A stretch of DNA of 64,000 bases from Gekko japonicus (GCF_001447785.1 NW_015165300.1:1-64000), one strand, 5' to 3'. Numbered from the stretch's first letter, positions 29,701 through 52,100 are shown. Notes: generated from the letters alone by a model not told the origin. Translations and numbers: made by a program.

Positions 29701-32092
29701 AAGGAGAGGCCTGGCCCACTCTGCCCCCCCGCCTGCCTCCTGCCCAATTTAATCAGAAAGCCCCCCCCCTCCACACACCCACAGGCAGACAGACAGACAC
29801 ACACCTGTTGTCATTCATCTGCGTGTAGCGCGGCTGGGGATCCGAATCCTGGTCGTTCACGTCGAAGCTGGCAGCAGAGTCCTGGAGAGAAAGGAGGTCA
29901 GTGCCGCCCCCTCCCCAAGACCCCCCCCCCGGGGAACTAGTTGAGGGGAGACCCCCCCCCATTCTGCTCTGTACAGGAAGAGTCCTCTCCTCCACGTCTG
30001 CCAGTCCTGCCCGGAGACTACAGGCACACACAGCCTCGGGCCCCATCCGGCCTGCCGTGCGCGGGGGGGGGGGGGGGGGCTCGGATCTGGGTTTCTGCCC
30101 CGTAACCGCTACACCACCGTGCCTTGGAGTCCCTGTGGCCCCGGGACCCCACGAGGGGCTTCTGAGGGAACTGCGGGGGGGCCTCCTCCCCACAGCTCCC
30201 CCCACAGGCAGGGCAGCTTCCCAGGAAGATCCACCTCCGGGTGCCGAGGAGGAGGAGAAGCGCACGCGGAGGTGGGACCCATGCTGCCCCCCCCCCGCGG
30301 CCCGCGCTGCCCCCCCCCACTATTGGCTTCTAGGTCCGGGTGGTTCTTCTCAATGCCGTCGTCCAAGATGGAGACCACGATGCCTCGGCCAGTGTAGCCT
30401 TGTCGCCAGGCTTCCCGCACGTTCAAGTCCCGCTGGTTCCCGTTGGCCTGGAGGAAGAAGAAGAAGAGATTGGATTTATACCCCTTGCCCTTCACTACCC
30501 GAAGGTGTCTCAGAGGGGCTCACAAACTCCTTTCCCTTCCCCTCCCCACAACAGAAGACACCCTGTGAGTTGGGTGGGGACGAGAGAGCTCTTGAGAGAG
30601 GACTGCTCTTTTTCAAGAACAGCTCTTATCAGAACTAGGGCTTGCCCAAGGTCACCCAGCCAGGTGCAAGTGGAGGAGTGGGGAATCAAACCCGGCTCTC
30701 CCAGATTAGAGTCCATGCACTTAACCACTACACCAAACTGGAGGAAGGAGAACCCCGCAGCCTTCAGAGCATGCGTCTTGGCGCCACAGCCCTCGCCCGG
30801 CTGGCCTGCCTACGGGGGGCCCCCCAAGGTGCCGTCTCCCCACGAGGGAGGTGCGGCGGAGGCCGCTCTTCTCCAGGTCTCTCAGGAGAGACAAGAGACT
30901 GCGGTGGGAGGCATTCTGCTCCGCTCAGCCACGGGCCACTTCCCCGCCCGCTCCAGCACCCCCGCTCTCTGGTCCCTGGTGGGCATTTGGACAATCCGGG
31001 CCACGTGATGCCTGATGCAGCGGCAGTCCCCTGCTGGAAACTCCACGTCTGCAGCCGCTCCGTTCTCATCCCTGACGCCTCCAGATCAAGGAAGAGCNNN
31101 NNNNNNNNNNNNNNNNNNNNNNNNNNNNNNNNNNNNNNNNNNNNNNNNNNNNNNNNNNNNNNNNNNNNNNNNNNNNNNNNNNNNNNNNNNNNNNNNNNNN
31201 NNNNNNNNNNNNNNNNNNNNNNNNNNNNNNNNNNNNNNNNNNNNNNNNNNNNNNNNNNNNNNNNNNNNNNNNNNNNNNNNNNNNNNAGTCCGGACCTCTG
31301 CAGGGGGGGCGGGGGGGCAGCCACAGCTCACATCATCGTCCCAGGGCACTGCTGCCCCTCGCCATGCCCCCAGGAGCCCCCCGCCCTCGCTTCAGGATGA
31401 CAGTCCTGGGCGGGGTCACCCAGAACAGACCGCGAAGAACGGTCCCTGACGGCCCTGCCCTGGGAACCCGCGCGGCCCACCCTCACTCACCAGGTACCAC
31501 TGCTGGGGGTACTTGGGGTCCGTCGGCTCCAGGGAGAGGTCTCTTTTCTTCCGTCTCTTTGCCACCTGCTGCTCCAGCCAGTGTACCTGAGGCAACGGGG
31601 GGGCGCGGGGGGAGAGAAGGTTTTTACGGGAGGACGGGCAGCCTCTCCAAACCCTTTCAGTCACACCAGCCTTATGGGTGCACAGAGCTTTCCTGGCACT
31701 GCGGCCTGGGTGGCACTGCCCAGGAGGCCAGCTGGGTACTCCCAACCCAGCTCTGCTATCCAGAGAGGAATGTAGGGTCTCGCAGCCCCTCCTCCTTCTG
31801 GGCACCAGGCCCAGAAGCGTCTCCGCAGACTCCAGGGCAAGCGAACAGAGGCCCCAGACGCCTCCACGGCAGCCACAGCCCAGGGGCGAATGGCAGGGGG
31901 ACCCGATCACATGCAGCTTTGCCGTTTCCCCATTTCAGCATGTCAAGCCACATGGGAATAAACAGAGCGTGCGGAACACGTACGGACGCCGGCCTTCATC
32001 TTTGAGACCTCCAGACTGGCCGACATATTCCCCTTGCCTGCCCCCCACCTTCGAGGACTGCCAACAGTCGCCATTTTTGCTGTACCCTCCCC

Positions 32093-32134
<42 letters not shown>

Positions 32135-35100
32135 GGAGCTGGAGATGTGGAAAGCAACTTATTCTCAGGGTTCAATGGATCCTCCGGTACCTTGGACCAG
32201 AAGAGGCGGTACCCACGAGAGCTGCCCGGCACGCCTGTCTGCACCAACCCACTCCTGCTCGGCTCAGCAGACTGAGGACTGGCGGGGTCCCTGCCCCTCC
32301 TGGGCCGCTTGGGCCCTCCTCCCTCTTGGACTTTCCCAGCAGCCCTGGGCTGGAGCCCCCCCCCCCGTGCAGGAGGAAGGGGGAGGGAGGCTGGCCAATG
32401 GCCACTGCCCGTCGGGAGAGGAGCTGGACCACAGCTTGGCAGCTGCTGCTGCTCCTCCTCCTCAGGGCTTCCTTCCCTGGCCCCCAAGACAGCCCCATGC
32501 ATCCCCTGCCCCACTGCTTCCAACCCAACCCAACCAAGCCCCTCATCGATGTCCAGGGAGGCACGTTGCCCATTTTGGATGCCCCAGACAGAAACTGGGC
32601 AGGGCCTGAAGCCAAGAGCACAGAGGCCAGGAGCACGAGCACCTCCCCTCCCAGGCACAGGGACCGGAAGCCGCTCCCACCGCCATGGCTGGCAAGAGCG
32701 GACCAAGCCCCCCTTGGTCTAACCCGAACGCACTCACCTCGGGCTCCCTGCTCAAGGAGCTGTGCCAGGATCTGTGGGGGGAGAGCGACCGCTTCGCCAC
32801 GGCCCGGTGGCAGAGGAGGAAATAGTCGTCAAAGATCTGGGGGGGGGGGGGGGGGGGCGGGCANNNNNNNNNNNNNNNNNNNNNNNNNNNNNNNNNNNNN
32901 NNNNNNNNNNNNNNNNNNNNNNNNNNNNNNNNNNNNNNNNNNNNNNNNNNNNNNNNNNNNNNNNNNNNNNNNNNNNNNNNNNNNNNNNNNTCCCTCTCCG
33001 GGCCCTCCCCCCACCTCTCCCAGCAGGCCGCAGGGACTGAATGAACCCCTCAGCAGGCCCCCACATGGACCCCCTGCTCTCCAAGGAAACCTTCCCACGA
33101 CAACGAACCCAGGGCAGTGGGGGCGGCTCTGCTCGGGTCTGGGCCTGGTACTTTTCAATATTTTTATAAATGATCTGGATGAGGGTGTGGAGGGGCTACT
33201 CATTCAATTTGCCGATGACACCAAATTGGGAGCAGCAGCAAATTCAACGAGGTCTGAACACGCTGGAAAACTGGGCGGATGTGAACAAAATGCCATTTAA
33301 CAAGGGTAAGTGTTGAGTTCTACATACGGTAACAAAAATGAGGAACACGTATACTGGATGGGGGGATACACTTCTGGGTAGCAGTGTGTGTGTGTGTGTG
33401 TGAACAAGATCTCGGGGTACGGGTGGACCGGAAGTGAAACATGAGCAGCCAGATTGAGGCGGCGACAAAAGAGGCTACTGCGATCTTGGGGTGTGTCAAC
33501 AGAGGCATAACAGCCAAATTGCAAGATGTGATCGTCCCGCTGTGCACTGCATTGGTCAGGCCGCGCCTGGAGTCCTGTGCGTAGTTCTGGAGGCCTCGCT
33601 TCAAAAAGGATGTGGGCAGAACGGGGCGGGTGCAGAGGAGAGCGCCGAGGGTGATCGGGGGGGGGGGGCCTGGGGGCCAAGAAGCCCACTGAGGAAAGGC
33701 CAAGGGACGTCTTGGGAATGTTGAGTCTGGAGAAGAGGAGGCTGAAGGGGGGCCATGACTGCTCCCATGAAGTATTGGAGGGGCTGTGTCGCTGAGAGAT
33801 GGGCAGGGAGCTGTAACCTGTGGGCAGCAGAGGAGAGGACGCGCAATCATGGGTTTAAACTAAGGGCGGGAAGGTACTGGCTGGGTATTAGGGAAAACCT
33901 TTTGACGGTCAGAGCTGTGCCACAGTGGAATCAGTCGCCCGGGGAGGTGGAGAGCTCCCACTCACTGGCCGTCTTCAAGCAGCGGCTGGACAGACCCTTG
34001 TCGGGGGGATGCTCTGGGCTGATCCTGCACTGAGCAGGGGGTGGGGGCTGGACGGCCTGTAGGGGCCCCCTTCCAACGCTGTGTGGTTCTATGGTTCTAA
34101 GTGAGCTGGTCTGAGGGGGGGAGGGGGCCCAGCTGCCCTCTCGGCCCCCCCCCCCGGTTGAGGCGGACTCCCTCGAACGCTAGCCCTTCCCCGCGACAGG
34201 GAGGGAGGGAGGGGGCTCCAGCGCAGAGGGAGAGAAGGCCCACTGAGCACCTGGGCTGCCCCTGAGCCTGACTGGCCGTGCCTCACCCACGGGCCTGAGG
34301 AGGAGACGGGGAAGGAAGCCAAGAGGAAGCAGAGAGCCAGAAGGACATGCAGCCGAGCACTGCCAAGGGACTGGGGCTGCACGGGCCGAGGGGACCCCTC
34401 CAGAACAGCAGCAGGAGAAACTATTGAGGCAGACTCAGCAGGGGTTCTGTAAAGGAAGATCTTCTCTCACTAACCTGTTAGTGTCCTTTGAGGGGGTGAA
34501 CAAACATGTGGACAAGGGGGACCCAACAGATGCTGTTTACCTTGACTTCCAGAAAGCTTTTGATAAAGTTCCTCATCAAAGGCTCCTAAGTAAGCTCAAT
34601 AGCCACGGGATAAAAGGACAAGTCCTCTTGTGGATCAAAAACTGGCTAATTAATAGGAAACAGAGAGTGAATATAAATGGGAAATTTTTTCAGTGGAGGG
34701 TGGTAAGCAGTGGGGTACCGCAGGGATCAGTACTCGGTCTGATGCTTTTTAACTTGTTTGTTAAAGATTTGGAGTTGGGAGTAAGCAGTGAAGTGGCTAA
34801 ATTTGCGGATGACATGAAGTTGTTCAGGGTGGTGAGAACCAGGGAGGATTGTGAGGCACTCCAAAGGGATATTCCGAGGATGGGCGAGTGGGCGTCAACG
34901 TGGCAAATGGGGTTCAATGTGGCCAAGTGCAAGGTGATGCGCATTGGAGCAAAAAATCCTAACTATAAATACACATTGATGGGGTCTGAACTGGCAGAGA
35001 CTGACCAAGAGAGAGATCTTGGGAGTCGTAGTAGATAACTCACTGAAAATGTCGAGACAGTGTGCAACTGCAATAAAAAAGGCCAACGCTATGCTGGGGA

Positions 35101-38100
35101 TTATTAGGAAGGGAACTGAAAACAAATCAGCCAGTATCATAATGCCCCTGTATAAATCAATGGGGCGACCTCATTTGGAGTACTGTGTACAGTTCTGGTC
35201 ACTACACCTCAAAAAGGATATTATAGTATTAGAAAAAGTGCAGAAAAGGGCAATGATAAAAGGGTTGGAACACTTTCCCTGTGAAGAAAGGTTAAAATGC
35301 TTGGGGCTCTTTAGCGTGGAGAAACGGCGGCTGAGGGGTGACATGATTGAGGTTTATAAGATGATGCATGGCACAGAGCAGGCTGAGAAAGAAGTACTTT
35401 TCTCCCTTTCTCACAAGACAAGAACTCGTGGGCACTCCATGAAATTGCTGAGCGGTCAAGTTAGAACGGATAAAAGGAAGTACTTCTTCACCCAAAGAGT
35501 GATGAACACATGGAATTCACTGCCACAGGAGGTGGTGGTGGCTACAAGCATGGACGGCTTCAAGAGGGAATCGGATAAGCATACGGAGCAGAGGTCCATC
35601 AGTGGCCATTAGCCACAAGATATGGATAGGGGCTCTGGGGCAAGGGGTGCTCTGTATTCTCGGTGCCTGGGGGGGGGCAACAGTGGGAGGGCTTCTAGTG
35701 TCCTCCTGGCCCCACTGCTGGACCTCCTGATGACACCTAGTATCGATGGCCACTGTGTGACCCAGAGTGTTGGACTGGATGGGCCACTGGCCTGATCCAA
35801 CACTGGCTTCTCTCGTATGTCCTTATGTTCAGGGCTGAGGTGCAGGGCAGAGTCCTTCCCCTCCGAGCCCAGAGAAGCAAGAGGGGCGGGAGGGGAGAGA
35901 CGACATCAGCACATGTTCCCCCCCCCTCACTGAGTGACCTGGCTGCACTCCCGGCTCTCGAGACGTCCCAGCACTTGGGTTGCTCAAAGATCTCCTGAAA
36001 GTATGACTTTTCTACAGGGGACAGCGACCGGCTCCCCTGGAGAAGATGGCTACCCCCACTAAGCACCCTCCCCAAACACCAAGCTCCATTCTCAAATCTC
36101 CAGGAATCCCAAAACCAGGAGTTGGCGAGCCCACATCCTGCCCACCATTCCCCACTTCCCAAGACATCCCTGCAGGGAGAGGATACCGCCTAGCATGCAG
36201 CGGGAGGAGGCCGGGGACACCACACCGAGCAGGTAGCGGGAGGAGGCCGGGGACACCACACCGAGCACGTGGAAACGCGAGTAAGATGGGACGGATTTCC
36301 AGGTGGCCCAGATGGATGACAACAGCTTCGAGGGCAACCTGAGTCCAACACGGAAGGAGAAGAGAGGCCTTCGGGGCTCAGGCCCCATCAAAAAGAGTGC
36401 GAGTCTTTGCCCCCTGAAGATACTTGAGGAGGGGCAAGGAGGAAGGGTGTTAGGCACGGGGTGTGTGTGTGCAAACTGACAATCCAAACAGAAAAAGCCA
36501 CTCCCCCGCCTGCCACATCAGCACGGGGGGGGGGGGCCCTGGGCACAGACGCCAGGAAGTTAGGGACATTCTGCTGAAGCCAAAGATTAAAAAACCGACC
36601 CTGCCCCCTTCTTACTGGAAAGCAACGGGCATATTAGGAAACACAAACATATGCAATGTTTACTCATCAAGCCTAAACTTTTTTCCTGCTTTAACACCAT
36701 AAAAAAGCATCATTAATAACATCGTCAGCATAAATGTGCTATTTGACAGAATTATGACAATTTTTAAATATAAATGACTTTGATTTCTGCAACAAAACAT
36801 TCTGACCATGCCCACTACTAAAGGAAGGGGAGGTTGGAAACTGTTGGACTTTCCACTACATTAGCAGATAAATCTTACTTTTTATCATTTGAGAGGTAGG
36901 GGAAAAAATGAAATTTGAACACAGAGAACAGAGAATTTTATCGTACTGGAAGTCTTATCTGGCCAGAAACAGCCTCATTCAGTAATAACAGGCATACAGC
37001 TTATTTCAATGCCAACTTTGTAAAACTGACCGCACTAAACAATGTTTTATCACCATATGCATGTTAATTGTGAAAAATTAGTCACATTTGAACAATAAAT
37101 ATGCTATATACGTAGGAATGATCACCTGCTAATGACACCTAGTATCTAGTATACTTTGTGGAGATTTTTTCCAGGGCTGCCCAAAATGTTAATTTTTCCA
37201 TTAGCAAAATGGGGGGAAAGTCCTCTGAACCCTCCCACCCTTGGGGGGTCTTCGTATCGCCAGTAGGCCGCGTGCCATAACTCTGATCACGAACAGAACA
37301 CAAAGTGTGCCCTCCCGGCTGGCAGGGAACCAGGCGCCACCTCCCTCGCCGCTTCTCCGTCTCTCTCCCTGCAGGAAGAGGCTGGCCTCACCCTGACCCA
37401 GCCCTGCCCACTGTGGGCACTGAAGCCCCAATCACTCCCCTGCTACCTCCCGGTGACATTTCCTGGTCTGAGTGCCAAAAGAGCACCCGTGCGCCACGTC
37501 TTCCTCTCCACAACTCCGGCACCCCAAGGCAGCAAAGGGGGCTGCAGGTGGGAAGAGCCGGCCCTCTGCCGTGGGGCAGGATAAGGGCGCTCCAGGCAAG
37601 CACGGCCCTTTCCAGGGGGCAGGGCCCTCCAGCACCAACCCTGCCAGTGCCGTGGGCCTCGCGATGCCTGCTGCCAAAGCCACACTGGCACGGGTGCTGC
37701 CACAGCACAGGAACCAACAGGCGGGCCCATCGCCCACACCAGAAAACAGCCAGCGGCTGGACTCCCCTACCAGGGTGTCAGCATTGCCTTCTGCTCGTAC
37801 GGGGGATTACGGGCACGCGCACAGCCTGAGCCAAACGTGGAGCAGGCAGAGACTCCACAAGCAGGTGCAGAGGCCGCCACTCCTCCGCTGCGGCCAGGTG
37901 GAAACCGGCTCCGCTCTGGCCACAGAAGCGGGGGGNNNNNNNNNNNNNNNNNNNNNNNNNNNNNNNNNNNNNNNNNNNNNNNNNNNNCGGAGCCCCCCCC
38001 CCCCCCCCGGAAAGAGACTGTGGCAAGCGAAGCCTTGGCCTGAGGTCCTGTTTATCGGAGGCCCCCGGCTGTCTGACTGGACCTTTTTTTAAAGAAAAGC

Positions 38101-38914
38101 CATGCATCTCCAGACCAAAAAAGAAGTAAATTATACAGGCATACATATTTAAAGCTTCCTTATTTGTAAGAGGAAGACAGTTTCATAGAACTAGAGCTGG
38201 AAGGGGCCAAACGGGCCATCCAGTCCAAACTCCTGCTCAGCGCAGGATCGGCCGAGAGCACCCAGCCGCTGCCTGAAGACTGCCAGTTTGGCATGTGTGT
38301 GTGTGGGGGGGGGAGCTCTCACACCTCCCTCAGCAGCCGACTGTAAAAACAATTTTTTCCACCCGAACCCTTTGCACGGGTAACTTAAGCCTGTTACTGC
38401 AAGTCCTGTCCTCTGCGGCTGCCCACAGGGACAGCTCAATGCCCTCCTCCTCCTCCACCTGACAGCCTTTCAAATACTTCAAGAGAGAGAGAGAGAGAGC
38501 GAGCGCAATCCTGTCCCCTCCTCCTCCACCTCCTCTTCTCCAGACTGGACACTCCCAGGCCCCAGAGCCTTTCCTCGCAGGGCTTGAAGAATTCCAGAAT
38601 TCTCTACCTGCAGCCAACCCCCCCCCCCGCCCAGTCCTGCTCCGGAAGGCAGCCCCTCCCCCATGGTCCACTGCCCACCTAGGAGGTTCTCCCCCCACAC
38701 CCAGCCCCGGCAGTCCCGGAGAAGCGGCACTCACCTGGCCAAAGTTCACAAAGCCATGCTTTCGGGCCAGCCTCTCCACTTCCTCGGGCCCCGCAGGCAC
38801 CCGCAGCGCCCAGGTGTTGGTGTAGAGGTGCTGGCCCACCACGCCCCTGACCAGGAGATCCAGAGCCAGCACAAAAGTCCACAGCAAGAGCAGCAGAGGC
38901 GGCCTCAGATCCAT
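23707..38914 (-). CDS. FURIN: Furin proprotein convertase (subtilisin/kexin family); 15 coding exons
   Basis: ATG 38914 ([12 protein letters not shown] signal peptide). Exons: 38914-38735, 32836-32738, 31586-31491 (RRKKR/D prodomain cleavage), 30447-30321 ([13 protein letters not shown]; 2 nt short), 29881-29805, 29525-29437 (HGTRCAGEV), 29090-28918, 28831-28619 (WASGNGG), 28531-28431 (GTSASAP), 28322-28219, 28115-27998, 26515-26336 (P domain RRGDL), 25936-25812, 25248-25132, 24254-23707 (Cys-rich, [16 protein letters not shown]). Lies upstream of FES on the same strand, as in mammals. Confidence 0.97.
26664..27169. mobile_element. MITE family A copy containing an antiparallel family A copy (26765-27061), which itself carries a retroelement tail
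   Basis: The inner copy is flanked by ctccagaa / ctccggag. An (ATAAATTTGATAAATA)n tail lies at ~26817-26890. Confidence 0.75.
27443..27892. mobile_element. hAT-type MITE family B copy
   Basis: Same ends as 3950-4773. TSD gggtagac / gggtagaa. Confidence 0.85.
30458..30741 (-). mobile_element. tRNA-derived SINE (Squam3-like), sense to FURIN, abutting a splice acceptor
   Basis: A-box TGGTGTAGTGG, B-box-like GGTTTGATTCC, tail ATAAATCCAATCT(CTT)n. Direct repeat CTTCCTCCAG at 30747-30738 and 30457-30448. Confidence 0.88.
32095..32132. repeat. (CA)n microsatellite
   Basis: Uninterrupted CA run in a FURIN intron. Confidence 0.9.
33110..34099 (+). mobile_element. CR1 LINE, 5'-truncated, degenerate RT
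   Basis: [31 protein letters not shown] motif and a CR1-type 3' end (ggttctatggttcta). Confidence 0.85.
34420..35830 (+). mobile_element. CR1 LINE, 5'-truncated, relatively young RT (frameshift near 35020)
   Basis: ORFs 34424-35038 ([28 protein letters not shown]) and 35019-35612 ([15 protein letters not shown]), with a ttatgttc-type tail. Confidence 0.92.
36200..36267. repeat. Tandem duplication of a ~36-bp unit
   Basis: gcgggaggaggccggggacaccacaccgagca occurs twice. Confidence 0.75.
38185..38600 (-). mobile_element. CR1 LINE 3' fragment
   Basis: catagaactagagctggaagggg...atccagtccaa tail end and gacagcctttcaaatacttc motif. Confidence 0.6.
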
Positions 38915-39224
38915 GAAAGCCGGGAGGTGGGGGGGGGGGGAGGAGGAGGAGGAGGCGGCCCGGGGAAGCTCAGAGGGGGCCCTTGCTCCGTCTGGCAAGG
39001 CCCCAGTCAGTCCGAGGCAGCATGGGGCAGGAGGTCACGGGTGCAGGAGGAGGGGTGGAAACGGCCGGAGCCTCTCAGCAGAAGGCACCCGCACGGCACC
39101 TGGGGACAAGGAAAGTCGACAGTCAGACTCGGGGGGGGGGGTGGATGTCAAGTTAATCTTGCATCAAAATAAACTGCGCTGGCTCTGGACAGGCCCTGCC
39201 GAGGCACATGCAAGCACATGCAAG

Positions 39225-39714
39225 TGCCAGTTTGGTGTCGTGGTTAGGAGTGTGGACACTGATCTGGGAGAACCGGGTTTGATTCTCCACTCCTGTACTT
39301 GCAGCTGCTGTGGTGACCTTGGGTCAGTCACAAGTTCTCTGAGAGCTGTTCCGTCAAGAGCAGTCCTCGAAAGAGCTCTCTCAGCCCCCACCCACCTCCC
39401 AGGCAATGCTCCCTCTAAGCTGTGGAGTCCTGTCAGCAAAAATTCTACTTTCTGAGCTACTGGCATTGAAGTTGTGAGCGAGCAATTTGGCTGCTGCATA
39501 AATTAGTTTGCTCTGGAGCCCTCCTTCCTGAGCTAAGACAAAAATGTGTGAGCGAGAGGCTAAAAAACTGTGAGCTAGCTCACACCAACTCAGCTTAGAG
39601 GGAACACTGCTCCCAGGGTGTCTGTTGTGGGGAGGGGAAAGGAGTTTGTAAGCCACTCTGAGACTCAGGGTAGTGAAGGGCGGGAGTATAAATCCAATCT
39701 CTTCTTCTTCTTCT
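39225..39714 (+). mobile_element. Squam3-like SINE interrupted by a MITE A copy
   Basis: gccagtttggtgtcgtggttaggag ... tataaatccaatctcttcttcttcttc. Confidence 0.85.
39404..39609. mobile_element. MITE family A copy inside the SINE
   Basis: Perfect 8-bp TSD CTCCCAGG at 39396-39403 and 39610-39617. Confidence 0.88.
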
Positions 39715-41003
39715 ACAGGGCGTTTCCCTCCCCCACACCCCCGGGCCAGCAGCACTGTGCAGCTCCAAAGGGAGCGTGGCCCCCAGCCCCTGTGCTCATG
39801 GGTGCGCCATGGCAGGCCCATAGCTACCGTGGGGCCACTCGGGGCCTTCCCCCCCCCAACTCACTGCCCAGGCCCCCTGACACCTGGCTGGCTGCAGGGA
39901 AGGGCAGGCGCAGGGCTGCTTGCTTGGGGGGGGGGGTGTTCCACGGTGCCCCCCGACTTATGTAAAGGTCCCCAGAATAATATTTTTAAAATCCCGCCTA
40001 TGGGCCTGCGCCATGGCGACATCCACAGCAGAAACACCCTCTTGCCAATCCCTTACTGGGGAGGGGAGGGCCAAGGCTTCCCTCCGAGGCACAAACACAA
40101 GAAGCAGCCTTGCAGGAGCCCGCTGGGCAAGTGACAGTGGATGCCCAGGCTGCAATCCACGCACAGCGTACGCCTGAGCTTCCTTTCTACATGGCGCGCG
40201 GCCATTTTCATGCTCAGTCCGACGCACGTCCAGCGCAACGTGTGATTTCAGTCCCGCGTGCGTCCAGGTACTAGGCCCTGTCTTCACTGGTACAGAAGTG
40301 ACGGTGCTGGGTCTTCCCGACACAGCTGTAACGTGTGAGCAGGCTACTCAGTCAGCCCCCTGGGCAAGAGAGGTCAGCCTCACCTCCGGTGCCTGGTGGC
40401 CGCCTTCCCCACCGCCCCCTTCCTGAGCCCTCTGCCGCCCAGCCAGGGGGGCCGTGTCCCATCACAGAGCGGCATCCCGGAGAGGAAGGCGGCAACAACG
40501 GGTGGCCTGAGATGACTGGCCTCCAGCTAGTCCGGCAGGGAGGGCCAAGGCGAGGTCCCCGGAAACAGCCACCCCCGGCCGCCTCAACAAGCCCTGGTCC
40601 ACCNNNNNNNNNNNNNNNNNNNNNNNNNNNNNNNNNNNNNNNNNNNNNNNNNNNNNNNNNNNNNNNNNNNNNNNNNNNNNNNNNNCCCCCCGGCAAGCAC
40701 CCCTCACCCAGGGAGCATCTGCTGGGCTTGGGGGAGATCTGGACCCGGCGGCCCCCAGAGCCGTAGGAGAGCCGCGCTCGGCCACACCGGTTCTCCCAGG
40801 ATCTGAGTCACGTCCGTCCTTCGGGAACGCAAATCAGCAGCGCTCTGGGCAGGGAGGGAGCCTACCTCACGGGGCTGTCGTGGAACGAAATGCGGCGGCC
40901 CCGGGCGGGGGTGGGGAGAATCGACAGACAGACCGACCGGCAGACAGACAGGGGGGGGCGGGCATCCCTCCCCCAGGGAGAGGCTCTGGGACGAAGCCCC
41001 CCC

Positions 41004-41984
41004 NNNNNNNNNNNNNNNNNNNNNNNNNNNNNNNNNNNNNNNNNNNNNNNNNNNNNNNNNNNNNNNNNNNNNNNNNNNNNNNNNNNNNNNNNNNNNNNNN
41101 NNNNNNNNNNNNNNNNNNNNNNNNNNNNNNNNNNNNNNNNNNNNNNNNNNNNNNNNNNNNNNNNNNNNNNNNNNNNNNNNNNNNNNNNNNNNNNNNNNNN
41201 NNNNNNNNNNNNNNNNNNNNNNNNNNNNNNNNNNNNNNNNNNNNNNNNNNNNNNNNNNNNNNNNNNNNNNNNNNNNNNNNNNNNNNNNNNNNNNNNNNNN
41301 NNNNNNNNNNNNNNNNNNNNNNNNNNNNNNNNNNNNNNNNNNNNNNNNNNNNNNNNNNNNNNNNNNNNNNNNNNNNNNNNNNNNNNNNNNNNNNNNNNNN
41401 NNNNNNNNNNNNNNNNNNNNNNNNNNNNNNNNNNNNNNNNNNNNNNNNNNNNNNNNNNNNNNNNNNNNNNNNNNNNNNNNNNNNNNNNNNNNNNNNNNNN
41501 NNNNNNNNNNNNNNNNNNNNNNNNNNNNNNNNNNNNNNNNNNNNNNNNNNNNNNNNNNNNNNNNNNNNNNNNNNNNNNNNNNNNNNNNNNNNNNNNNNNN
41601 NNNNNNNNNNNNNNNNNNNNNNNNNNNNNNNNNNNNNNNNNNNNNNNNNNNNNNNNNNNNNNNNNNNNNNNNNNNNNNNNNNNNNNNNNNNNNNNNNNNN
41701 NNNNNNNNNNNNNNNNNNNNNNNNNNNNNNNNNNNNNNNNNNNNNNNNNNNNNNNNNNNNNNNNNNNNNNNNNNNNNNNNNNNNNNNNNNNNNNNNNNNN
41801 NNNNNNNNNNNNNNNNNNNNNNNNNNNNNNNNNNNNNNNNNNNNNNNNNNNNNNNNNNNNNNNNNNNNNNNNNNNNNNNNNNNNNNNNNNNNNNNNNNNN
41901 NNNNNNNNNNNNNNNNNNNNNNNNNNNNNNNNNNNNNNNNNNNNNNNNNNNNNNNNNNNNNNNNNNNNNNNNNNNNNNNNNNNN
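41004..41984. other. Largest assembly gap; probably contains FURIN promoter or 5'UTR exon sequence
   Basis: N run with a CpG-rich left flank and a minus-strand donor-like gag|gtagg at ~40865. Other gaps: 23372-23631, 24918-25017, 31098-31286, 32864-32990, 37936-37987, 40604-40685. Confidence 0.7.
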
Positions 41985-42132: not shown

Positions 42133-42737
42133 TAAGAACATAAGAACATAAGAGACGCCAATGTTGGATCAGGCCAAAGGCCCATCCAGTCCAACACTCT
42201 GTGTCACACAGTGGCCAGAAATACCAGTGCCATCAGGAGGTCCAGCAGTGGGGCCAGGACATTAGAAGCCCTCCCACTGTTGACCCCCCCCCAAGCACCA
42301 AGAAGACAGAGCATCACTTGCCCCAGAGCCCCTAGCTATACCTTGTGGCTAATAGCCACTGATGGACCTCTGCTCCATATGCTTATCTAATTCCCTTTTG
42401 AAGCCGTCCATGCTTGTAGCCGCCACCACCTCCTGTGGCAGTGAATTCCATGTGTTATAATCACTCTTTGGGTGAAGAAGTACTTCCTTTTATCCTTTCT
42501 AACCCGACCGCTCAGCAATTTCATGGAGTGCCCACAAGGAGTTCTTGTCTTGTGAGAAAGGGAGAAAAGTACCTCTTTCTCTACCTGCTCTTTCCCATGC
42601 ATAATCTTATAAACCTCAATCATGTCACCCCTCAGTCGTCCTTTCTCCAAGCTAAAGAGCCCTAAGCGCCTTAACCTTTCCTCATAGGGAAAGTGTTCCA
42701 ACCCCTTTATCATTTGAGTTGCCCTTTTCTGCACTTC
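42133..42737 (-). mobile_element. CR1 LINE 3' fragment, same subfamily as 34420-35830
   Basis: [20 protein letters not shown]...[15 protein letters not shown], with a (TAAGAACA)n tail on the plus strand. Confidence 0.88.
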
Positions 42738-43074: not shown

Positions 43075-43370
43075 CCGAGAGACCCCCGTTCAGGTCCCAC
43101 TCTGCCATGGAAGTTTGGCGGGTGACCGAGTCGGGCCACTCACACACTCCCAGCCTGACCTACCCCACAGGGTTGTTGCAAGGATACAGTGGAGGAGAAT
43201 AGTTGGTTTATACCCCACTCTTCACTGATCCAAGGCGTCTCAGAGCGGCTTACAAGCGCCTTCCCTCCCTCCCTCCCTCCCTCCACAAGAGACACCCTGG
43301 GAGGTAGGTGGGGCTGAGAGAGCTCTGAGGGAACCGTGACTGACCCGAGGTCCCCCAGCTGGCCTCTACA
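43075..43370. mobile_element. Two partial SINE fragments joined tail to tail
   Basis: Plus-strand gttcaggtcccactctgccatggaag...agcctgacctaccccacagggttgttg is followed by a minus-strand Squam3-like 3' part. Confidence 0.55.
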
Positions 43371-44518: not shown

Positions 44519-44815
44519 GAAGAAGAAGAAGAAGAAGATTGGATTTATACCGTCCGCCCTTCACTACCCAGAGGAGTCTCAGAGCAGCTTACAGATCTCC
44601 TTTCCCTTCCCCTCCCCACAACAGACAGACACCCTGTGAGGTGGGTGGGGCTGAGAGAGCTCTGACAGAAACTGCTCTTTTTCAAGGACAGCTCTTATCA
44701 GAGCTTGTGACTGACCCAAGGTCACATCAGCAGGTGCAAGTGGAGGAGGAGTGGGGAATCAAACCCGGTTCTCCCAGATTAGAGTCCGCCTGCACTTAAC
44801 CACGACACCCAACTG
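44519..44815 (-). mobile_element. Squam3-like SINE with (CTT)n tail
   Basis: Same body as the copies at 30458, 39225 and 49219. Confidence 0.85.
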
Positions 44816-44947
44816 AGGGACCAGGGCCAGAGCCTCAGAGGAGTTCCCAAGCAGACAGCAGTTCATTTTTCATCCACCTCCGGTGTTACATCAGCTTCAC
44901 ACAACTACGGGGGGGGGGGGAAACCGTACTGAACAGTCACTTCAGAC

Positions 44948-46069: not shown

Positions 46070-46280
46070 ACGTGTGGAACGTTAGCCTCGGATGTGGGAG
46101 ATGCAGGTCTGGATTCCCACTCTGCCACATGGAAGCCTGGGGCCACTTCCACTCTCCCAGCCTAGCCTCTCTCACAGGGTGGTTGTAAGGATAAAATAAA
46201 AGACGGGAAAACAATGTAAACTGCTTTGGGTCCCCACTGGGTAGAAAAGCAGGGTATACAGGAGGTAAATAAATAAAATA
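46070..46280 (+). mobile_element. Older SINE copy (Squam3/L2-related)
   Basis: ggattcccactctgccacatggaagc...cagcctagcctctctcacagggtggttgtaagg...gggtatac...aaataaataaa. Confidence 0.55.
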
Positions 46281-48259
46281 TAAAAGTGATCAGTAGAAGC
46301 AGCTAGAAAATTTTAATACTTGCCACGAATGATTAGGGTAGCAACAGAGATGTGAAGGCCATGGGGGGGGGGGGAAGAAAGCAGGGGAGGGCTTTTTTCT
46401 GGGGCTGGAAAAAGAATTCTATGAAAGATTTTTTCTTTCATAATGAGTTAAATGCTTCTTTACGTTTTTTCCCCACACTAAAAAGGTATAGCATAAAAAG
46501 GTTTCCAGGCTCTTTAAATTTTTCCAGTGAAAAACACCTTTGTGACACTGTTGTTGGAAAGGTTTTTTTTAAAAATAATAATAATAAAATAACACAAATA
46601 CACCCTGACCTGGATGGTGGCTGTAACACAGGCCAAGCAGAAGAAATTCCCAATACATCATCTGGTTGGTTTACAGAGCCTTTTGACCCAGCTACCATGA
46701 AGGATATTGACCGGGCCCTGGGATCCATGAAGGCTACCCTCTCGGGCATTTGACCCTCGCCCACCCTGGCTGCTGGAATCACGAAAGGGTCACACAATAA
46801 TGAGCTCTTGGGGTCTAGTGGACATCCGTCACTAAGCCTAGGCACCTTTCCTCAGCCACTCATGCACACAGTTATCGGTTCACTACTTTAAAAACCAGCC
46901 CTGCAGAAAAACCATGTGGCCAACTATCCCCCAGTCTCCCATCTGCCCTTTCTAGGTACAGTGACTGACAGGACAGTGGCAGACCAGCTCCAGGTCTTCT
47001 TGAGTAACTCATCTGCTCTGGACTCTCTTCTCCAGGCTGGGCAATGGGGCAGAGATGGCCCCCGGTGGCTTTAGTTGGGGGCCTCTGTCTGAATGCAGAC
47101 AAAGGCCAGGCCGCCGCTGCTGCTGCTCTTAGAAAAGCTGCAGCCTCTGATACAGAACATCACGACCTCCTCTTGAGATGAGGTGGAAGTAAGGATCAGG
47201 GTGTGTGCCTAGGACTGGTTTTAATTGTTCCTCGTGGATTGTACTCTGAGGGCTGCCATTGGAGACACAGGGCGTAACCTTGCCCTTAACTTGTTCAACC
47301 CCTTTAGGAGAAACCATTTATAGCCTGGCAACTGGACACCATCAAACATTGCCCTGGCACTTTAAGAACTGCCAGGGGCCTCCGCTGGAGGAGGCTCCTT
47401 CGCTCAACGTCATCCCCCTTACACAGCCCCCCCCCCCCGTGCTCACCACAACAATTTCACTCATCCGAGCAGGGCTTTTCTGCAGGTGCCAACCTGCAAA
47501 TGAGCAAAACCAGCCACCGTCCATACATGCGCAGTCTCTGCTGTGGCCCCCACTTTATGGAATGGCCTACCTGATGAGGCCACGCAGGCTCCCATGGTTC
47601 TGTCACTCCACAGACTATGCAAAATTGTTCGGGGGGGGGGGGTTATCAAGGTGAGATGGCTGTAAGAGGACCGTTCAGGGAGACACTTTTATAAGGACTG
47701 TGAACTGTACCACTCTGTGCAGTATATGTTTCTGTAAGACCTTGCTCTCCCTGTACTGTTTTATACTTAATATCGTTTTCTGCCTTGTATCTAGTCTAAT
47801 ATTACCATGCCTTGTTTCAGATTGCTGTACTCCTAGTCCTGTGACACGGCTTATTAGATAGATAGATGACCCTGTTGCTCGCATTGATTTACACAGTGTA
47901 GTCCACCTTGAATCTTCGTGAGCAAGACAGACCAGAGATAAAAGTAAATGAATAAATGGGATGCTTTGTGTCATGCTCACTGGAGGCATACAAGGCAAGG
48001 GAAGGGCTCCCAGCAGGCTGACCAGTTATGCCAGCACCCACCCGTTCCCCGCCCTACAACTTCGGAGGGCCCAGCAGTCCTCCACGGCCTCTCAAGAGGG
48101 GCATTCCCTTTTATGTGTGACTCTTCCCCCCCCCCATCCGTGTGCCTCCTCAGTCTCCTCAAGGACAGCGGGGTTGTGATCCACCTCAGTGCTCCGACAC
48201 CCAGAGCCCTGCCTTAGTTTTCGTGGGGATCCAGCCACCCGGCGGGTCAGACTCAGGAG

Positions 48260-48471
48260 CAGAGTTCCCTCTAAGCTGAGTGAGTGTGAGCCAGCTCGCA
48301 GTTTTTCAGCCTCCGGCACACACACACTTTTGCCTTTAGCTCGGGAAGGGATGGGGCTCCAGAGCAAACTCATTGATGCGGCAGCCCAATCGCTGGCTCA
48401 CCCCTTTCATGCCAGCAGCTCACCAAGTGGAGTTTTTGCCCACAAGACCCCACAGCTCGGAGGGAGCATCG
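48260..48471. mobile_element. MITE family A copy
   Basis: Perfect TSD CTCAGGAG at 48252-48259 and 48472-48479. Confidence 0.88.
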
Positions 48472-48559
48472 CTCAGGAGATGCGAACCAGGCAGAGGGTG
48501 GAAGGGAGCCGGGCTACAAGTCCAGGGAAGCCTCTGCCGCCCCAGGTCCTTGCTGGAAG

Positions 48560-49150
48560 AGGCCGGGCGAGGGAAGCCGCCACAAACCGCTGGGGCCCGA
48601 GGGGGGAGAGGAGACCGGCGGCTCCTCCCCCTGACCCTCTGCCCGGCCTTCGCGCCTCCCCCAGGCCTCGGGGCGCCCCCCCTTCAGCGCGAAGGGCCGC
48701 CCCACCGCGCCATGCTGGGGAGGCCAGAGCGAGCAGCGACTCATGCAGGGTTGCGCCGCCGCTGCCCCCCTTCCCTGCCTCGCGGCCCCCGGGAGGAAGT
48801 CCCGCCTCCGGAAGCGGGCCAGCCCGGCGGCCTCTTCCTGTTCTCGCGGTCTGTTTCCGGAAGTGCGCCGTCCCCTGCCGTAGGACTTCCGGGTCGTCTC
48901 TGGTGGTCGCTCCAGCTGCCGCTCCCTCCCTCCCTCGCCGCCGTTGGGCCTGAGCGCGCACTCGGTCGCCGCCACCGCCGCCGCCCGCGGCCTCTTCCTC
49001 CTCACCATGTCGGGCTCCAGCAGCGCCCTCATGAAGCAGCCCCCGATCCAGTCGACGGCGGGGGCCGTGCCCGTCCGCAACGAGAAGGGTGAGGCGGCGG
49101 GCGAGGGAGGGAGGGGGAGAGGGGCGAGGAGGGCGGCCTGTGTCCCCCCC
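48560..49150 (+). promoter_or_regulatory. CpG-island promoter of MFAP1 with ETS/GABP-type motifs
   Basis: CpG-dense stretch over the ATG, with CCGGAAG (~48808), TTCCGGAAGTG (~48855) and ACTTCCGGG (~48885) motifs typical of housekeeping promoters. Confidence 0.7.
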
Positions 49151-52100
49151 CAGTACCCTCCCCCGCGAGAGAGTTGCCCTGACCGTGGCTGCTGCTGCTG
49201 CTGCTTTCTCCTCCTCCTCCAGTTTGGTGTGGTGGTTAAGTGCAGGCGGACTCTGATCCGGGAGAACCGGGTTCGATTCCCCCACTCGCGCCTGCTGGAT
49301 GACCTCGGGCAAGCCGTAGTTCTGACAAGAGCTGTCCTTGGAAAAAGAGCCGTTTCTGTCAAGAGCTCTCTCAGCCCCACCTACCTCACAGAGTGCCTGC
49401 TGTTGTGGGGAGGGGGAGGGAAAAGGAGTTTGTAAGCCGCCCTTGAGACTCCTTTGGGTAGAGACTCCGGGGTATAAATCCAATCTCTCCTCCTCGCAGG
49501 GGAGATCTCCATGGAGAAGGTGAAAGTGAAGCGCTATGTGTCCGGCAAGCGGCCGGACTATGCGCCCATGGAGTCCTCCGATGAGGAGGATGAGGAGTTC
49601 CAGTTCATCAAGAAGGCGAAGGAGCAGGAGCTGGAGCCCGAGGAGAAGGACGAAGAGCTGACCAGCGACCCCCGCCTGCGGCGCCTGCAGAACCGCATCA
49701 GCGAGGACGTGGAAGAGAGGTCCGCCCTGGCCGGGATCCGGGGGGAGGCGGGTGGCAGCAGCACCACTGCTGCCCCGGGGGTGTGTGTGTGAGGCTCTCT
49801 GGGGCACCCAAAGAGGCTCTGAAGCACCGGGCAGATGAGAGGAGGCACCCTGCAGGGTGGGCATGTTCTGTCTCCGGTAGGTACAGCGTGTAACGGAGCA
49901 GCTGCTTGAAAGGCCCTGGCCTAAGGCTGAGTTTATATTCTAGGCTGGCAAGGCACCGTAAGATTGTGGAGCCAGAAGTGGTGGGGGAGAGTGACTCAGA
50001 AGTGGAGGGAGAGGCATGGCACATGGAGCGAGAGGACACCAGCGAAGAAGAGGAGGAAGAAATCGACGATGAGGTACAAATCTGGTTGTGCTCTAGACTC
50101 CAGCACTGTCAGCGGTTGGGCTTTCGTGTTGCTGCATTCTTCTGAATTTCAGAAGTACGTTTTCCTGTAGGAACAAATTGTTACATGAACATATCTCATA
50201 CCAACTCAGATAATTTGTTCATCTATTCTGACTGGCATGAGTCTGTTCGTGATCCTGTAACTGAAGATTCCAAAGAATGACTGTTTTACCCATTGCCTCT
50301 TTCTGATGCAGCCACAGGGACTCTGCTTCACCCTTTCCCCTTTTACTAGGAAATCGAGCGCCGCCGTAGCATGATGCGGCAACGTGCACAGGAGCGGAAG
50401 AACGAGGAGATGGAAGTGATGGAGCTGGAAGATGAAGGCCACTCTGGGGAAGAGTCTGAGTCTGAGTCGGAATATGAGGAATACACAGACAGTGAGGATG
50501 AGACTGAACCACGCCTCAAACCAGTCTTCATCCGCAAGTAAGTGCCACTGCTGCTGGATGAGGTGGGGTGGTGTAAGTTAATTATCAAGACAACAGAGAG
50601 AGAAGGGGCAGGGAATCTGCCGCGGAAGCATTCCCTGTTTTATAACACTGGCATGGTTTCTTCTTGTTGGTAGCATAAGAAGGTGTGGCCTCTCTCGAGT
50701 TCCCCAGAAGAAGGTAGGGAGGGTACCAGATTCATGCATGGATTCTAGACGGCGGTTTCATGGATGTCTTTCTGGACAGGGCTGGGCTTAAAAAGCGTAG
50801 GGCTCACCAAAAATGTCTTCTGCAGGAAGGACCGAGTCACAGTCCAGGAACGAGAGGCAGAGGCGCTGAAGCAGAAAGAATTCGAGCAGGAGGCCAAGCG
50901 GATGGCTGAGGAGAGGCGCAAGTACACACTTAAGGTAAGAGGGAAAACAAGACTGCTTGTGTGAGGGTGGAAGAGAAGGCTGGACAGCGTCAGGAATTTC
51001 TCCATGTTGATTGACATTGCAGATCGTGGAAGAGGAAGCCAAGAAAGAGCTGGAAGAGAACAGGCGCTCTTTGGCTGCCCTGGATGCGCTCGACACTGAT
51101 GACGAAAACGATGAGGAAGAATATGAGTCTTGGAAAGTGCGGGAGTTGAAGCGCATCAAGCGGGACCGTGAGGAACGGGAAGCGTAAGTGAAGTCAGGCC
51201 AGAGCTAAAGGGCATTTTTTCCTCCAAGTACCTCAGGCCAGGGGTAAAATAGGGAGTTGTGTATGGTGGCTGCCTCCAGATGAGGGAGTCTTCTGGACAG
51301 AGGAGGGGCTGGAAGGAATATCTGTGGTGAATGCTAATGGGATTTGTATCTTTTTTAAAATTCCTTTGATCTACCTGGGAGTTTAGTTTTAGCTGAAAAA
51401 CTTGATAAAAACAGTGAGAGGTATTCTTGTAGCCATAACAAATGATGTGGAAAACAGGTGCAAGTATAAACCAATTTCTAGAGATCAAAAGCTTGCATTT
51501 CTTTTTTAAATTGGTTACTTTATCTTTTAGTCAGCTTTAAAATATCACACAAACATATTAATGCCTACAGTCTTCTAAATGTGAATCAGAGCCTCTATCT
51601 ATACCGAGAAGCAGGTTTTACATGGAGGCTGTACAACAAGCGTTACGTGTGACAATACGAGTCACATTACATTACTGTAAAATACAGCAAGAGTTTTAGA
51701 GTTAGTGTGACGACTCATTAGTAGCAAACAGTTGTCAGGGCAACTTATTAGTATGCATGCTTACTTGGGAAATACATAAATTAGTTGGAAAGCTGATTGA
51801 AAATACTTGTTTTTATTTGTGGTTTTTCTTGCCAAATGTAAGTCACTCCACTATGGTAGATGGGGACATGCACGGAGAGGTCATCTGTGCAGATCCCTAA
51901 ACTGAACTTTTCCTTCCTGTAGGTTAGAGAAGGAGAAGGCAGAGATTGAGCGGGTGAGGAATCTGACTGAGGAGGAACGCCGCGCAGAGCTCCGAGCAAA
52001 TGGCAAAGTCATCACCAACAAGGCCGTGAAGGGCAAATACAAATTCCTGCAGAAGTACTACCACCGGGGGGCCTTCTTCATGGTATGCGAGTGCTGATGG

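What the first reader, a model, noticed from the sequence alone, without database searches (positions are those of the whole stretch)
30448..49500. Candidate system: a pyrimidine-tailed SINE family that targets splice-acceptor tracts and restores them
Two of the four near-full-length copies in 64 kb (30458 and 49219; the others are 39225 and 44519) end within about 15 nt of a coding acceptor, both in sense orientation. That seems unlikely by chance, although n is tiny. A plausible mechanism (inference): the (CTT/CTC)n tail anneals to CT-rich targets during target-primed reverse transcription, so polypyrimidine tracts are preferred. The tail plus TSD then rebuild a working 3' splice site. This is the opposite geometry to antisense Alu exonisation in primates.
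Basis: inference. Interest (0 to 1): 0.8.

Follow-up and report, generated by a model that had tools for sequence, protein, structure and literature searches.

The report
SINE tails serving as splice acceptors
Two old copies of a known gecko jumping element (a Squam3-type SINE) sit, pointing the same way as the gene, inside the 3' splice sites of FURIN and MFAP1, and their pyrimidine tails now act as the working splice signal; a real preference for such sites is plausible but was not proven here.

Summary
The window carries four near-full-length copies of one tRNA-headed SINE with a (CTT)n tail, plus one old 3' fragment. Two copies lie in sense orientation with their tails running into the AG of conserved coding acceptors: a FURIN exon starting at 30447 (minus strand) and MFAP1 exon 2 at 49500. 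Matches to solved human proteins leave no residue missing at either junction. RNA reads show MFAP1 exon 2 beginning at about 49500 and the SINE spliced out.

By length (266-279 nt) and tail the element fits the published Squam3 subfamily 3B3, whose partner is an L2 LINE. It is not Sauria, whose tail is (ACCTTT)n.

Both acceptor-adjacent copies have all-pyrimidine 5' flanks, so they entered existing polypyrimidine tracts. A close relative's FURIN ORF has no SINE there. Under uniform placement, two such hits among five copies has P of about 4e-4. If insertions seek CT-only runs, about 15% of those runs are acceptor tracts (P about 0.02). The other three copies are not in CT runs.

"Restores the acceptor" is supported. 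"Targets acceptors" is best read as a by-product of tail-to-target pairing at CT-rich DNA. This scan's unchecked notes list about ten similar loci on other DNA of this genome. The genome-wide test could not be run.

The parts
30468..30740 (-). SINE body (273 nt), sense to FURIN. The head is CAGTTTGGTGTAGTGGTTAAG; the 3' end is GGTATAAATCCAATC.
30450..30467 (-). Tail tcttcttcttcttcctcc, running into the acceptor AG (30448-30449). It now serves as the polypyrimidine tract of the FURIN exon.
30325..30447 (-). FURIN coding exon ([10 protein letters not shown]...[14 protein letters not shown], includes the catalytic Asp region). Its acceptor abuts the SINE tail.
   Evidence: furin chains, E 1e-16; one search shows the upstream exon ends at chain residue 17 and this exon starts at residue 18
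30741..30767 (-). Old 3' splice region left upstream of the SINE: CTGAA (A at 30764) and tract ttctccttcctc. Together with the SINE's first CAG (30738-30740) it forms a decoy acceptor.
31491..31586 (-). Upstream FURIN exon ([16 protein letters not shown]...[10 protein letters not shown]). Its donor opens the intron that holds the SINE and the gap 31098-31286.
49220..49485 (+). SINE body (266 nt), sense to MFAP1. It fills about two thirds of the 411-nt intron 1.
49486..49499 (+). Tail tctcctcctc plus gcag: the polypyrimidine tract and AG of MFAP1 exon 2.
49500..49719 (+). MFAP1 exon 2 (matches human residues 28-99).
   Evidence: E 7e-34; depth step at 49498 and the downstream junction joining 49719 to 49944
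49007..49088 (+). MFAP1 exon 1 coding part (ATG at 49007; donor GT at 49089).
49179..49219 (+). Old branch-point-like CTGAC (A at 49182) and old pyrimidine tract, left upstream of the SINE. With the SINE's CAG (49220-49222) they form a decoy acceptor that is almost unused.
   Evidence: (X23 depth 0-0.4 over 49228-49281)
49473..49479 (+). TATAAAT in the conserved SINE 3' end. Its UAA core (A at 49477, 22 nt upstream of the exon) is the only UnA motif in the 34-nt AG-free zone. The matching site in the FURIN copy has its A at 30476, 28 nt upstream. This is an inferred branch point.
   Evidence: motif scan only; not mapped
39228..39714 (+). Older copy lying upstream of FURIN coding exon 1. It is split by a nested element with inverted ends (39403-39610). 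Its 5' flank is not CT-rich.
44519..44815 (-). Copy with an 18-nt (TTC)6 tail. Its flanks are not CT-rich, no target duplication is recognisable, and no known exon is nearby.
43192..43326 (-). Old 3' fragment of a related copy.

Best explanation
These are two independent, old, fixed insertions of a known squamate SINE. By length and tail it fits Squam3 subfamily 3B3: tRNA-like head, MIR/Ther1-like core, L2-type 3' end and a (CTT)n tail.

Each copy went, in sense orientation, into the existing CT-rich polypyrimidine tract a few bases upstream of the acceptor AG of a conserved exon.

Shown:
- the positions and orientation of the copies
- the pyrimidine flanks on both sides
- exact protein continuity across both junctions
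- at MFAP1, use of the exon-proximal acceptor with the SINE removed from the mRNA

Inferred:
1. During target-primed reverse transcription by the L2 partner, the (CUU)n RNA tail pairs with the nicked purine-rich bottom strand. CT-rich runs are therefore favoured and the copy ends up in the same direction as the tract.
2. After insertion, three parts together make a complete 3' splice site, so the insertion was nearly neutral and could be fixed. The parts are the conserved SINE end GGTATAAATCCAATC (a UAA-core branch-point candidate 22-28 nt upstream), the pyrimidine tail, and the remaining bases of the old tract with its AG.
3. Acceptor tracts make up about 15% of CT-only runs in this gene-dense region, so acceptor hits are a by-product of a CT-run preference. 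No mechanism that recognises acceptors is needed.
For: - Copies and boundaries.
- Family fit: bodies of 266-279 nt with a (CTT)n tail, against 267-271 nt and (CTT)n for Squam3 3B3 in geckos (PMC7983390 Table 1). Sauria ends in (ACCTTT)n (PMC13295347).
- Acceptors exact.
- RNA depth step at 49498 and no SINE in the mRNA.
- All-pyrimidine 5' flanks at both loci: (runs 30740-30752 and 49204-49220).
- Short repeats of 4-5 bases (cctc) on both sides, in line with the roughly 5-bp target duplications of an L2-clade LINE (PMC4245944).
- A close relative's FURIN ORF, P0110, is 41/43 identical over the exon. Upstream it reads ...GHGSVPSSLFQ (codons rich in pyrimidines) with no SINE-derived peptide in any frame. 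This is an empty site that already had a pyrimidine tract.
- Uniform null P = 4e-4; CT-run null about 0.02.
- The same AG-free zone (34 nt) and the same single UnA core in both copies.
- Pairing of the L2, CR1 or RTE 3' end with the target is described in PMC6007223.
Against: - Only two events, chosen after the fact.
- Three of five copies are not in CT runs, so any preference is partial.
- Published 3' microhomology for these clades is only one to several bases, much less than a whole tract.
- The MFAP1 tail is CTC-type rather than CTT-type. I cannot tell whether it is a mutated tail or target sequence.
- The intron-1 junction row itself was not listed, because joints from other SINE copies swamped the table. 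Use of the acceptor therefore rests on the depth profile.
- No RNA was laid on the FURIN site.
- The branch point is a motif guess.
- P0110's species is unknown and its DNA could not be fetched.
Confidence: 0.6

Rival explanations
1. Chance plus survivorship. The SINE inserts without regard to CT content. With roughly 10^5 copies in a gene-rich genome, some land at acceptors. Only the sense copies whose tails keep the 3' splice site working survive, and the first reader picked a window that happened to hold two.
For: n = 2. The window was selected after the fact from many (the scan has notes on 764 windows of this genome). Three of five copies are in ordinary sequence. The family is very abundant. 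The antisense strand carries a strong cryptic acceptor (a 21-nt pyrimidine run followed by ACAG), so sense bias inside genes is expected from selection alone.
Against: Uniform placement gives P = 4e-4 for this window. Survivorship can only remove insertions near splice sites; it cannot enrich them over neutral intronic positions. Both copies that lie between coding exons sit at acceptors. The scan's notes list about ten more such loci, although these are unchecked.
Confidence: 0.25
2. True acceptor targeting. The L2 machinery or the SINE RNP is drawn to 3' splice sites as such, for example through factors bound at the tract or through transcription-linked accessibility, beyond simple CT pairing.
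For: Even under the CT-run null, both CT-run insertions being at acceptor tracts has P of about 0.02. The scan's notes report many similar cases.
Against: No known mechanism exists. Integration acts on DNA, whereas splice factors act on RNA. The P value comes from a window chosen after the fact. The CT-run definition is arbitrary, and poly-C runs inflate the denominator.
Confidence: 0.07
3. Assembly artefact. Repeat copies were misplaced next to exons in a gap-rich draft assembly.
For: The region has five gaps. The SINE is highly repeated, so reads from other copies pile up on it (depth up to 2,300 in the DNA run).
Against: Neither junction touches a gap. The two copies differ from each other (87% identity) and each has a unique flank on both sides. 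RNA depth drops to zero in the unique part of intron 1 and rises at 49498 exactly as the assembly predicts.
Confidence: 0.03

Closest known systems
Squam3 SINE, subfamily 3B3 (Vassetzky et al. 2021, PMC7983390)
   Same: tRNA-like head with A-box-like and B-box-like motifs. Body of 266-279 nt, against 267-271 nt published. (CTT)n tail. Few recognisable target duplications. Density of about one copy per 13-16 kb, similar to about 180,000 copies in Gekko japonicus. Reads also show SINE-derived tandem arrays like those described for that gecko (PMC10702118).
   Different: The papers I read do not mention any association with splice acceptors.
Sauria / Squam1 SINE (Bov-B partner)
   Same: A similar tRNA-like head (CCAGT.TGGTGTAGTGGTTAAG), which is why first readers call it a 'Sauria head'. 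This similarity is from my memory and was not tested.
   Different: Sauria ends in (ACCTTT)n with a Bov-B-type 3' end and shows the Tn-TA target signature (PMC13295347). The copies here end in GGTATAAATCCAATC(TTC)n.
L1-driven Alu insertions into 3' splice sites (NF1 hotspots, PMC3219598) and the canine merle SINE at the PMEL intron 10/exon 11 boundary (PMC7349775)
   Same: The sequence preference of a LINE enzyme makes polypyrimidine tracts frequent landing sites: 4 of 14 de novo NF1 Alu insertions hit the AG or the tract. In merle, a SINE tail becomes part of the tract.
   Different: Those insertions are L1/poly(A)-based and break or shift splicing, causing exon skipping or disease. Here the tail is itself pyrimidine in the sense direction, and the normal junction is kept.
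Antisense Alu exonisation in primates
   Same: A SINE tail supplies a polypyrimidine tract for a 3' splice site.
   Different: With Alu, the antisense poly(T) creates a new, usually alternative exon inside the element. Here the sense tail serves an old, conserved exon and no SINE sequence enters the mRNA.
Tail-to-target pairing in TPRT of the L2, CR1 and RTE clades (reviewed in PMC6007223; ZfL2 data in PMC4245944)
   Same: The 3' repeat of the RNA pairs with the nicked target strand. Target duplications are short, about 5 bp.
   Different: Reported overlaps are one to several bases. A preference for whole CT-rich tracts has not been described, as far as my searches reached.

Membership tests
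Squam3 SINE (3B3) | tRNA-derived head with Pol III A and B boxes | tested here: inconclusive
   Read directly from the sequence, the head has TGGTGTAGTGG (A-box-like) and GGTTCGATTCC / GGTTTGATTCC (B-box-like). ARAGORN and Rfam report no tRNA, as expected for a decayed head.
Squam3 SINE (3B3) | Body length of about 267-271 nt without the tail | tested here: met
   266, 273 and 279 nt, against Table 1 of PMC7983390.
Squam3 SINE (3B3) | (CTT)n tail | tested here: met
   The copies at 30 kb, 39 kb and 44 kb carry (TTC)4-6. The 49-kb copy has tctcctcctc.
Squam3 SINE (3B3) | CORE/Ther1-derived body and L2-derived 3' end; alignment to the published consensus | not testable with these tools
From memory, TGACCTTGGGCAAG and ACCTACCTCACAGGGT..TTGTGGGGA resemble MIR/Ther1; this is a lead only.
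Squam3 SINE (3B3) | [quoted passage not shown] | tested here: met
   No recognisable duplication at the 39-kb and 44-kb copies. The two acceptor copies show only 4-5 bases (cctc) within CT-rich DNA.
Sauria / Squam1 SINE | (ACCTTT)n tail and a Bov-B-type 3' end | tested here: not met
   All tails are (TTC)n or CTC-type. The defining feature is taken from PMC13295347.
   Within the window, P = 4e-4 under uniform placement and about 0.02 under the CT-run null, with n = 2 chosen after the fact. The other loci noted by the scan are unchecked.
   Two of five copies have all-pyrimidine 5' flanks of 12 nt or more. Such runs cover 2.6% of strand positions. The other three copies do not have them.
   MFAP1: RNA depth and residue continuity. 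FURIN: residue continuity only.
   There is only a motif: one UnA core (aUaAa) in the 34-nt AG-free zone of both copies. No lariat data exist.

The most novel reading that the evidence does not exclude
The L2-mobilised, (CTT)n-tailed Squam3 SINE of geckos integrates preferentially into CT-rich polypyrimidine tracts. This would make 3' splice sites genome-wide hot spots. Because the element's own end (a UAA-core branch-point candidate plus a pyrimidine tail) replaces what it displaces, such hits are tolerated and accumulate. That would be a naturally splice-safe insertion geometry. It also leaves a decoy acceptor (old branch point, old tract and the SINE's CAG) that the cell largely ignores.
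Probability: 0.3. Interest if true: 0.7.

Novelty: new variant of a known kind. Interest (0 to 1): 0.5.

Why it matters
Retroelement insertions next to splice sites are normally harmful and depleted there. A common SINE that can sit inside acceptors of essential genes without changing the mRNA would matter in three ways. FURIN encodes an essential protease and MFAP1 a spliceosome component.

- It would show how an element's tail chemistry shapes both where it lands and whether the landing is tolerated.
- It gives a natural test bed for 3' splice-site choice. A canonical old branch point, tract and CAG decoy lies 277 nt upstream of the acceptor actually used, yet it appears in under 1% of reads.
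- It warns annotators of squamate genomes that repeat-masking these SINE tails removes real splice signals.

If the excess is not confirmed genome-wide, the finding reduces to two tolerated insertions of a known SINE.

Tried and rejected
- **Orthologous empty sites as DNA.** Only the protein-level reading of P0110 was possible.
- **More copies from public collections.** Pattern scans of metagenome and viral contigs for the SINE end plus tail found nothing.
- **The MFAP1 intron-1 junction row.** The joints table of the single read-laying run was filled by joints from other SINE copies and SINE-derived tandem arrays. The 49088/49500 joint was not listed, so I used the depth profile instead. No second call was available for FURIN.
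- **Rfam and ARAGORN on 30-50 kb.** No hits.
- **Rejected: Sauria SINE.** The tail and 3' end are wrong.
- **Rejected: 'duplicated acceptor' as a target duplication.** The CAG is the SINE's own 5' end in 4 of 4 copies.
- **Rejected: acceptor shift or new exon boundary.** Residue numbering is continuous with the human proteins.
- **Rejected: insertion into an older SINE's tail.** No SINE 3' motif lies upstream of either copy.
- ORFs P0002, P0003, P0008 and P0028 carry the human MFAP1 exon-2 sequence and may be human or other mammalian, so I set them aside and did not search them further. No N stretch was filled.


Full report
**What is there**

The window is from a squamate, very probably a gecko. 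The run tool codes the organism, and an earlier follow-up note of the scan calls it a gecko.

blastn of the 49-kb element against the window finds five places. An alignment fixes their limits:
- minus strand: body 30468-30740 with tail 30450-30467
- plus strand: 39228-39714, interrupted by a nested element with 20-nt inverted ends at 39403-39422 and 39591-39610
- minus strand: an old 3' fragment at 43192-43326
- minus strand: body 44537-44815 with an 18-nt (TTC)6 tail at 44519-44536
- plus strand: body 49220-49485 with tail 49486-49495

Every copy begins CAGTTTGGTGT.GTGGTTAAG and ends GGTATAAATCCAATC followed by the tail. The 15-mer and a core 19-mer each occur far more often than in shuffled sequence. 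Bodies are 266, 273 and 279 nt. Three copies are 84-87% identical to one another, and the 39-kb copy is older at 72-78%.

**The assembly gaps**

None of the five N stretches touches a copy or either splice junction. The gap at 31098-31286 lies inside the FURIN intron, 357 nt upstream of the SINE head. The exons on both sides of that intron are consecutive in the protein, as shown below.

The gap at 32864-32990 ends 27 nt upstream of another FURIN acceptor (32836), so what precedes that acceptor is unknown. Gaps at 40604-40685 and 41004-41984 could hide further copies. I filled no gap.

**The two acceptors are real and exact**

I searched exons one at a time by reference and did not join them.

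MFAP1:
- Exon 1 (49007-49088) matches human MFAP1 residues 4-26.
- Exon 2 (49500-49719) matches residues 28-99, E = 7e-34.
- Residue 27 is the codon split by the intron.

FURIN:
- The upstream exon ends ...[10 protein letters not shown] at furin chain residue 17.
- The exon that abuts the SINE (30447 down to 30325) starts at residue 18.

RNA reads of the same species label were laid on 48850-50450. In run X23, depth is 0 over 49120-49227 and 0-0.4 over the SINE head. It is about 2 over 49444-49497, and 40-55 on one strand class plus 12-22 on the other from 49498 onward. The next two junctions (49719 to 49944 and 50073 to 50350) are listed as GT..AG joints.

The intron-1 joint itself was not among the rows shown. 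Joints from other SINE copies crowded the table. So use of the 49500 acceptor rests on the depth step and on protein continuity. I had only one read-laying run, so FURIN has no RNA evidence.

**What the element is**

It is not a Sauria (Squam1) SINE. Those end in (ACCTTT)n and share a Bov-B 3' end (PMC13295347).

Squamates have three described SINE families. The (CTT)n tail belongs to Squam3B (PMC10702118; PMC7983390). Table 1 of the Squam3 paper lists subfamily 3B3 only in geckos: 271 nt, 81% mean similarity and about 180,000 copies in Gekko japonicus, and 267 nt in Paroedura picta. Length, tail, divergence and density here all fit.

The reads also show joints that run from a SINE tail back into the SINE body, with 23-32 extra letters between (tables 5 and 5c). 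That is the pattern of the Squam3-derived satellites described for G. japonicus.

Membership therefore rests on architecture.

**Where the two copies landed**

Both 5' flanks are all-pyrimidine runs: ttctccttcctc at FURIN and ctttctcctcctcctc at MFAP1. Both 3' sides read tail, then cctcc-AG or ctc-gc-AG.

Natural acceptors of these two genes carry the same kind of C/T-rich tract. So each copy sits inside a former polypyrimidine tract, a few bases from its AG.

The 4-5-base repeat (cctc) on both sides agrees with the roughly 5-bp duplications of an L2-clade LINE (PMC4245944). In such sequence, though, it could also be chance.

There is one proxy for an empty site. A word search with the ORF that spans the SINE end and the FURIN exon found P0110, from a public read assembly of unknown species. 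P0110 is 41/43 identical over the exon. Upstream it reads ...LAWGHGSVPSSLFQ and contains no translation of the SINE end in any frame. The last codons (P, S, S, L, F, Q) are what a CT-rich tract ending in CAG would give. So a close relative lacks the insertion and already had a pyrimidine tract there.

**Is it more than chance?**

I located 22 acceptors of FURIN and MFAP1 in 23.7-53 kb.
- With uniform position and orientation, a copy's tail ends within 15 nt upstream of one of them with p = 0.0063. P(at least 2 of 5) is then 4e-4.
- If insertions instead seek pyrimidine-only runs of 12 nt or more with at least four T, 8 of 54 such runs (15%) are acceptor tracts. Two acceptor hits out of two CT-run insertions then have P of about 0.02.
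- Such runs cover 2.6% of strand positions, so two of five copies lying in them is itself unusual, at about 0.006.

All these numbers come from a window picked because it looked odd. Three of the five copies (39, 43 and 44 kb) are in ordinary sequence.

They name ACTL6A, DMAC1, TUBG1, CENPA, a DNase gene, TMC8, MMS19, CHERP and two others. I could not read those windows, so they are leads and not evidence.

My rough arithmetic assumes the published G. japonicus copy number, about 200,000 acceptors in 2.5 Gb and 49 Mb scanned. It gives 2-6 such cases under uniform placement. The notes, if correct, would therefore point to an excess.

**How it most likely works**

Shown: position, orientation, pyrimidine flanks and an unchanged mRNA junction.

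Inferred: the (CUU)n RNA tail pairs with the purine-rich nicked strand of a CT-rich target when the L2 partner starts reverse transcription. That favours CT runs and fixes the orientation so the tail reads as pyrimidines on the tract's strand. Pairing of the 3' end with the target is an accepted feature of the L2, CR1 and RTE clades, but only over one to several bases (PMC6007223).

After insertion, the acceptor is rebuilt from SINE parts. In both copies the AG-free zone upstream of the acceptor is 34 nt. It contains a single UnA core, the UAA in GGTATAAATCC, at 22 nt (A at 49477) and 28 nt (A at 30476) upstream of the exon. A tract that is 80-100% pyrimidine follows. The branch point is a motif-level guess only.

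**An unexplained point**

The old signals are still there upstream of each SINE, and the element's own first three bases are CAG. This makes a decoy acceptor at the 5' junction.

At MFAP1 the decoy has a perfect CTGAC 40 nt upstream and a 47-nt AG-free zone. Using it would add 277 nt and shift the reading frame. Yet X23 shows 0-0.4 reads over the SINE head against 52-77 in exon 2. Nonsense-mediated decay may hide some use, but the exon-proximal site clearly wins.

This corrects the sibling note that the FURIN acceptor was 'duplicated'. The CAG is SINE sequence, present in all four copies.

**Orientation**

The antisense strand of the element carries a 21-22-nt pyrimidine run followed by ACAACAG (for example 30527-30547, 44596-44617 and 49407-49428). 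That is a strong cryptic acceptor. Selection against antisense copies in genes would by itself give a sense bias, which weakens the weight of 'both are sense'.

**Comparison with what is known**

The family is known. The idea that a LINE's target preference makes polypyrimidine tracts frequent landing sites is also known for L1/Alu. Four of 14 de novo NF1 Alu insertions hit the AG or the tract, and all disrupted splicing (PMC3219598). The canine merle SINE at the PMEL intron/exon boundary is another case (PMC7349775).

What differs here is the geometry. A sense copy whose own tail is pyrimidine leaves the conserved junction intact. My literature searches found no description of this for Squam3 or any other squamate SINE.

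**Verdict**

- Observation: confirmed.
- Interpretation: partly supported. 'Restores' holds. 'Targets acceptors' is best read as a CT-run preference that remains to be shown genome-wide.
- It is a new variant of a known kind, of moderate interest.

Some ORFs returned carry the human MFAP1 exon-2 sequence. I left them aside.

Noticed in passing
window 49179-49222 and 30738-30767: There are decoy acceptors at the SINE 5' junctions: the old branch-point-like motif (CTGAC at MFAP1, CTGAA at FURIN), the old tract and the SINE's own CAG. At MFAP1 the decoy looks at least as good as the used site by motif, yet it is seen in under 1% of reads (X23). Use of the FURIN decoy was not tested.
   Followed up: partly
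window 49400-49488 (reads of runs X21, X22, X24): Many reads join a SINE tail back to the middle of a SINE body, with 23-32 extra letters (e.g. TCTTCTTCTTTTACCTCACAGGGTGT). Elsewhere in the genome, therefore, part of this SINE forms tandem arrays with a unit of roughly 115-130 nt. This resembles the published Squam3-derived satellites of Gekko japonicus.
   Followed up: partly
window 39403-39610: A small element of about 210 bp with 20-nt, 90% complementary inverted ends (GCAATGCTCCCTCTAAGCTG / CAGCTTAGAGGGAACACTGC) is nested inside the 39-kb SINE copy. It is probably a MITE.
   Followed up: partly
window 30527-30547, 39629-39644, 44596-44617, 49407-49428 (the strand opposite each copy): The antisense strand of the SINE has a 16-22-nt pure pyrimidine run followed by ACAACAG, a strong cryptic 3' splice site. 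This could explain a sense-orientation bias of the family inside genes.
   Followed up: no
window 29320-29372 (+): There is a fragment ending GGGGTATAAATCGAACT followed by an A-rich TAAA-like tail (aaggaataaacaaatg). It looks like the 3' end of a Squam3A-like or L2-like element. It lies antisense to FURIN, about 60 nt downstream of the donor of the HGTRCAGE exon.
   Followed up: no
window 30075-30125 (-): A second tRNA-like head fragment (GGTGGTGTAGCGGTTACGG...) lies in the next FURIN intron, sense to the gene. Its family was not identified.
   Followed up: no
window 38743-38950 (-) and 48900-49088 (+): FURIN coding exon 1 (signal peptide, ...[30 protein letters not shown]) and the MFAP1 start lie head to head about 10 kb apart. 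The 39-, 43- and 44-kb SINE copies sit in this shared upstream region.
   Followed up: partly
window 32836-32990: The FURIN acceptor at 32836 is preceded by a 19-nt poly-C tract and then directly by an assembly gap (32864-32990). What lies upstream of that acceptor is unknown.
   Followed up: no
window 48924, 48960, 50410: RNA runs X23 and X24 differ from the assembly in all reads at 48924 (C>G) and 48960 (A>T). At 50410 (A>C), X24 differs in all reads, X21 in about half and X23 in none. These are probably differences between individuals.
   Followed up: no
window 35397-35412 (+) and 42554-42569 (-): The same 26-nt string (cttttctccctttctcACAAGACAAG) occurs on opposite strands 7 kb apart. It likely marks two copies of another repeat family.
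   Followed up: no
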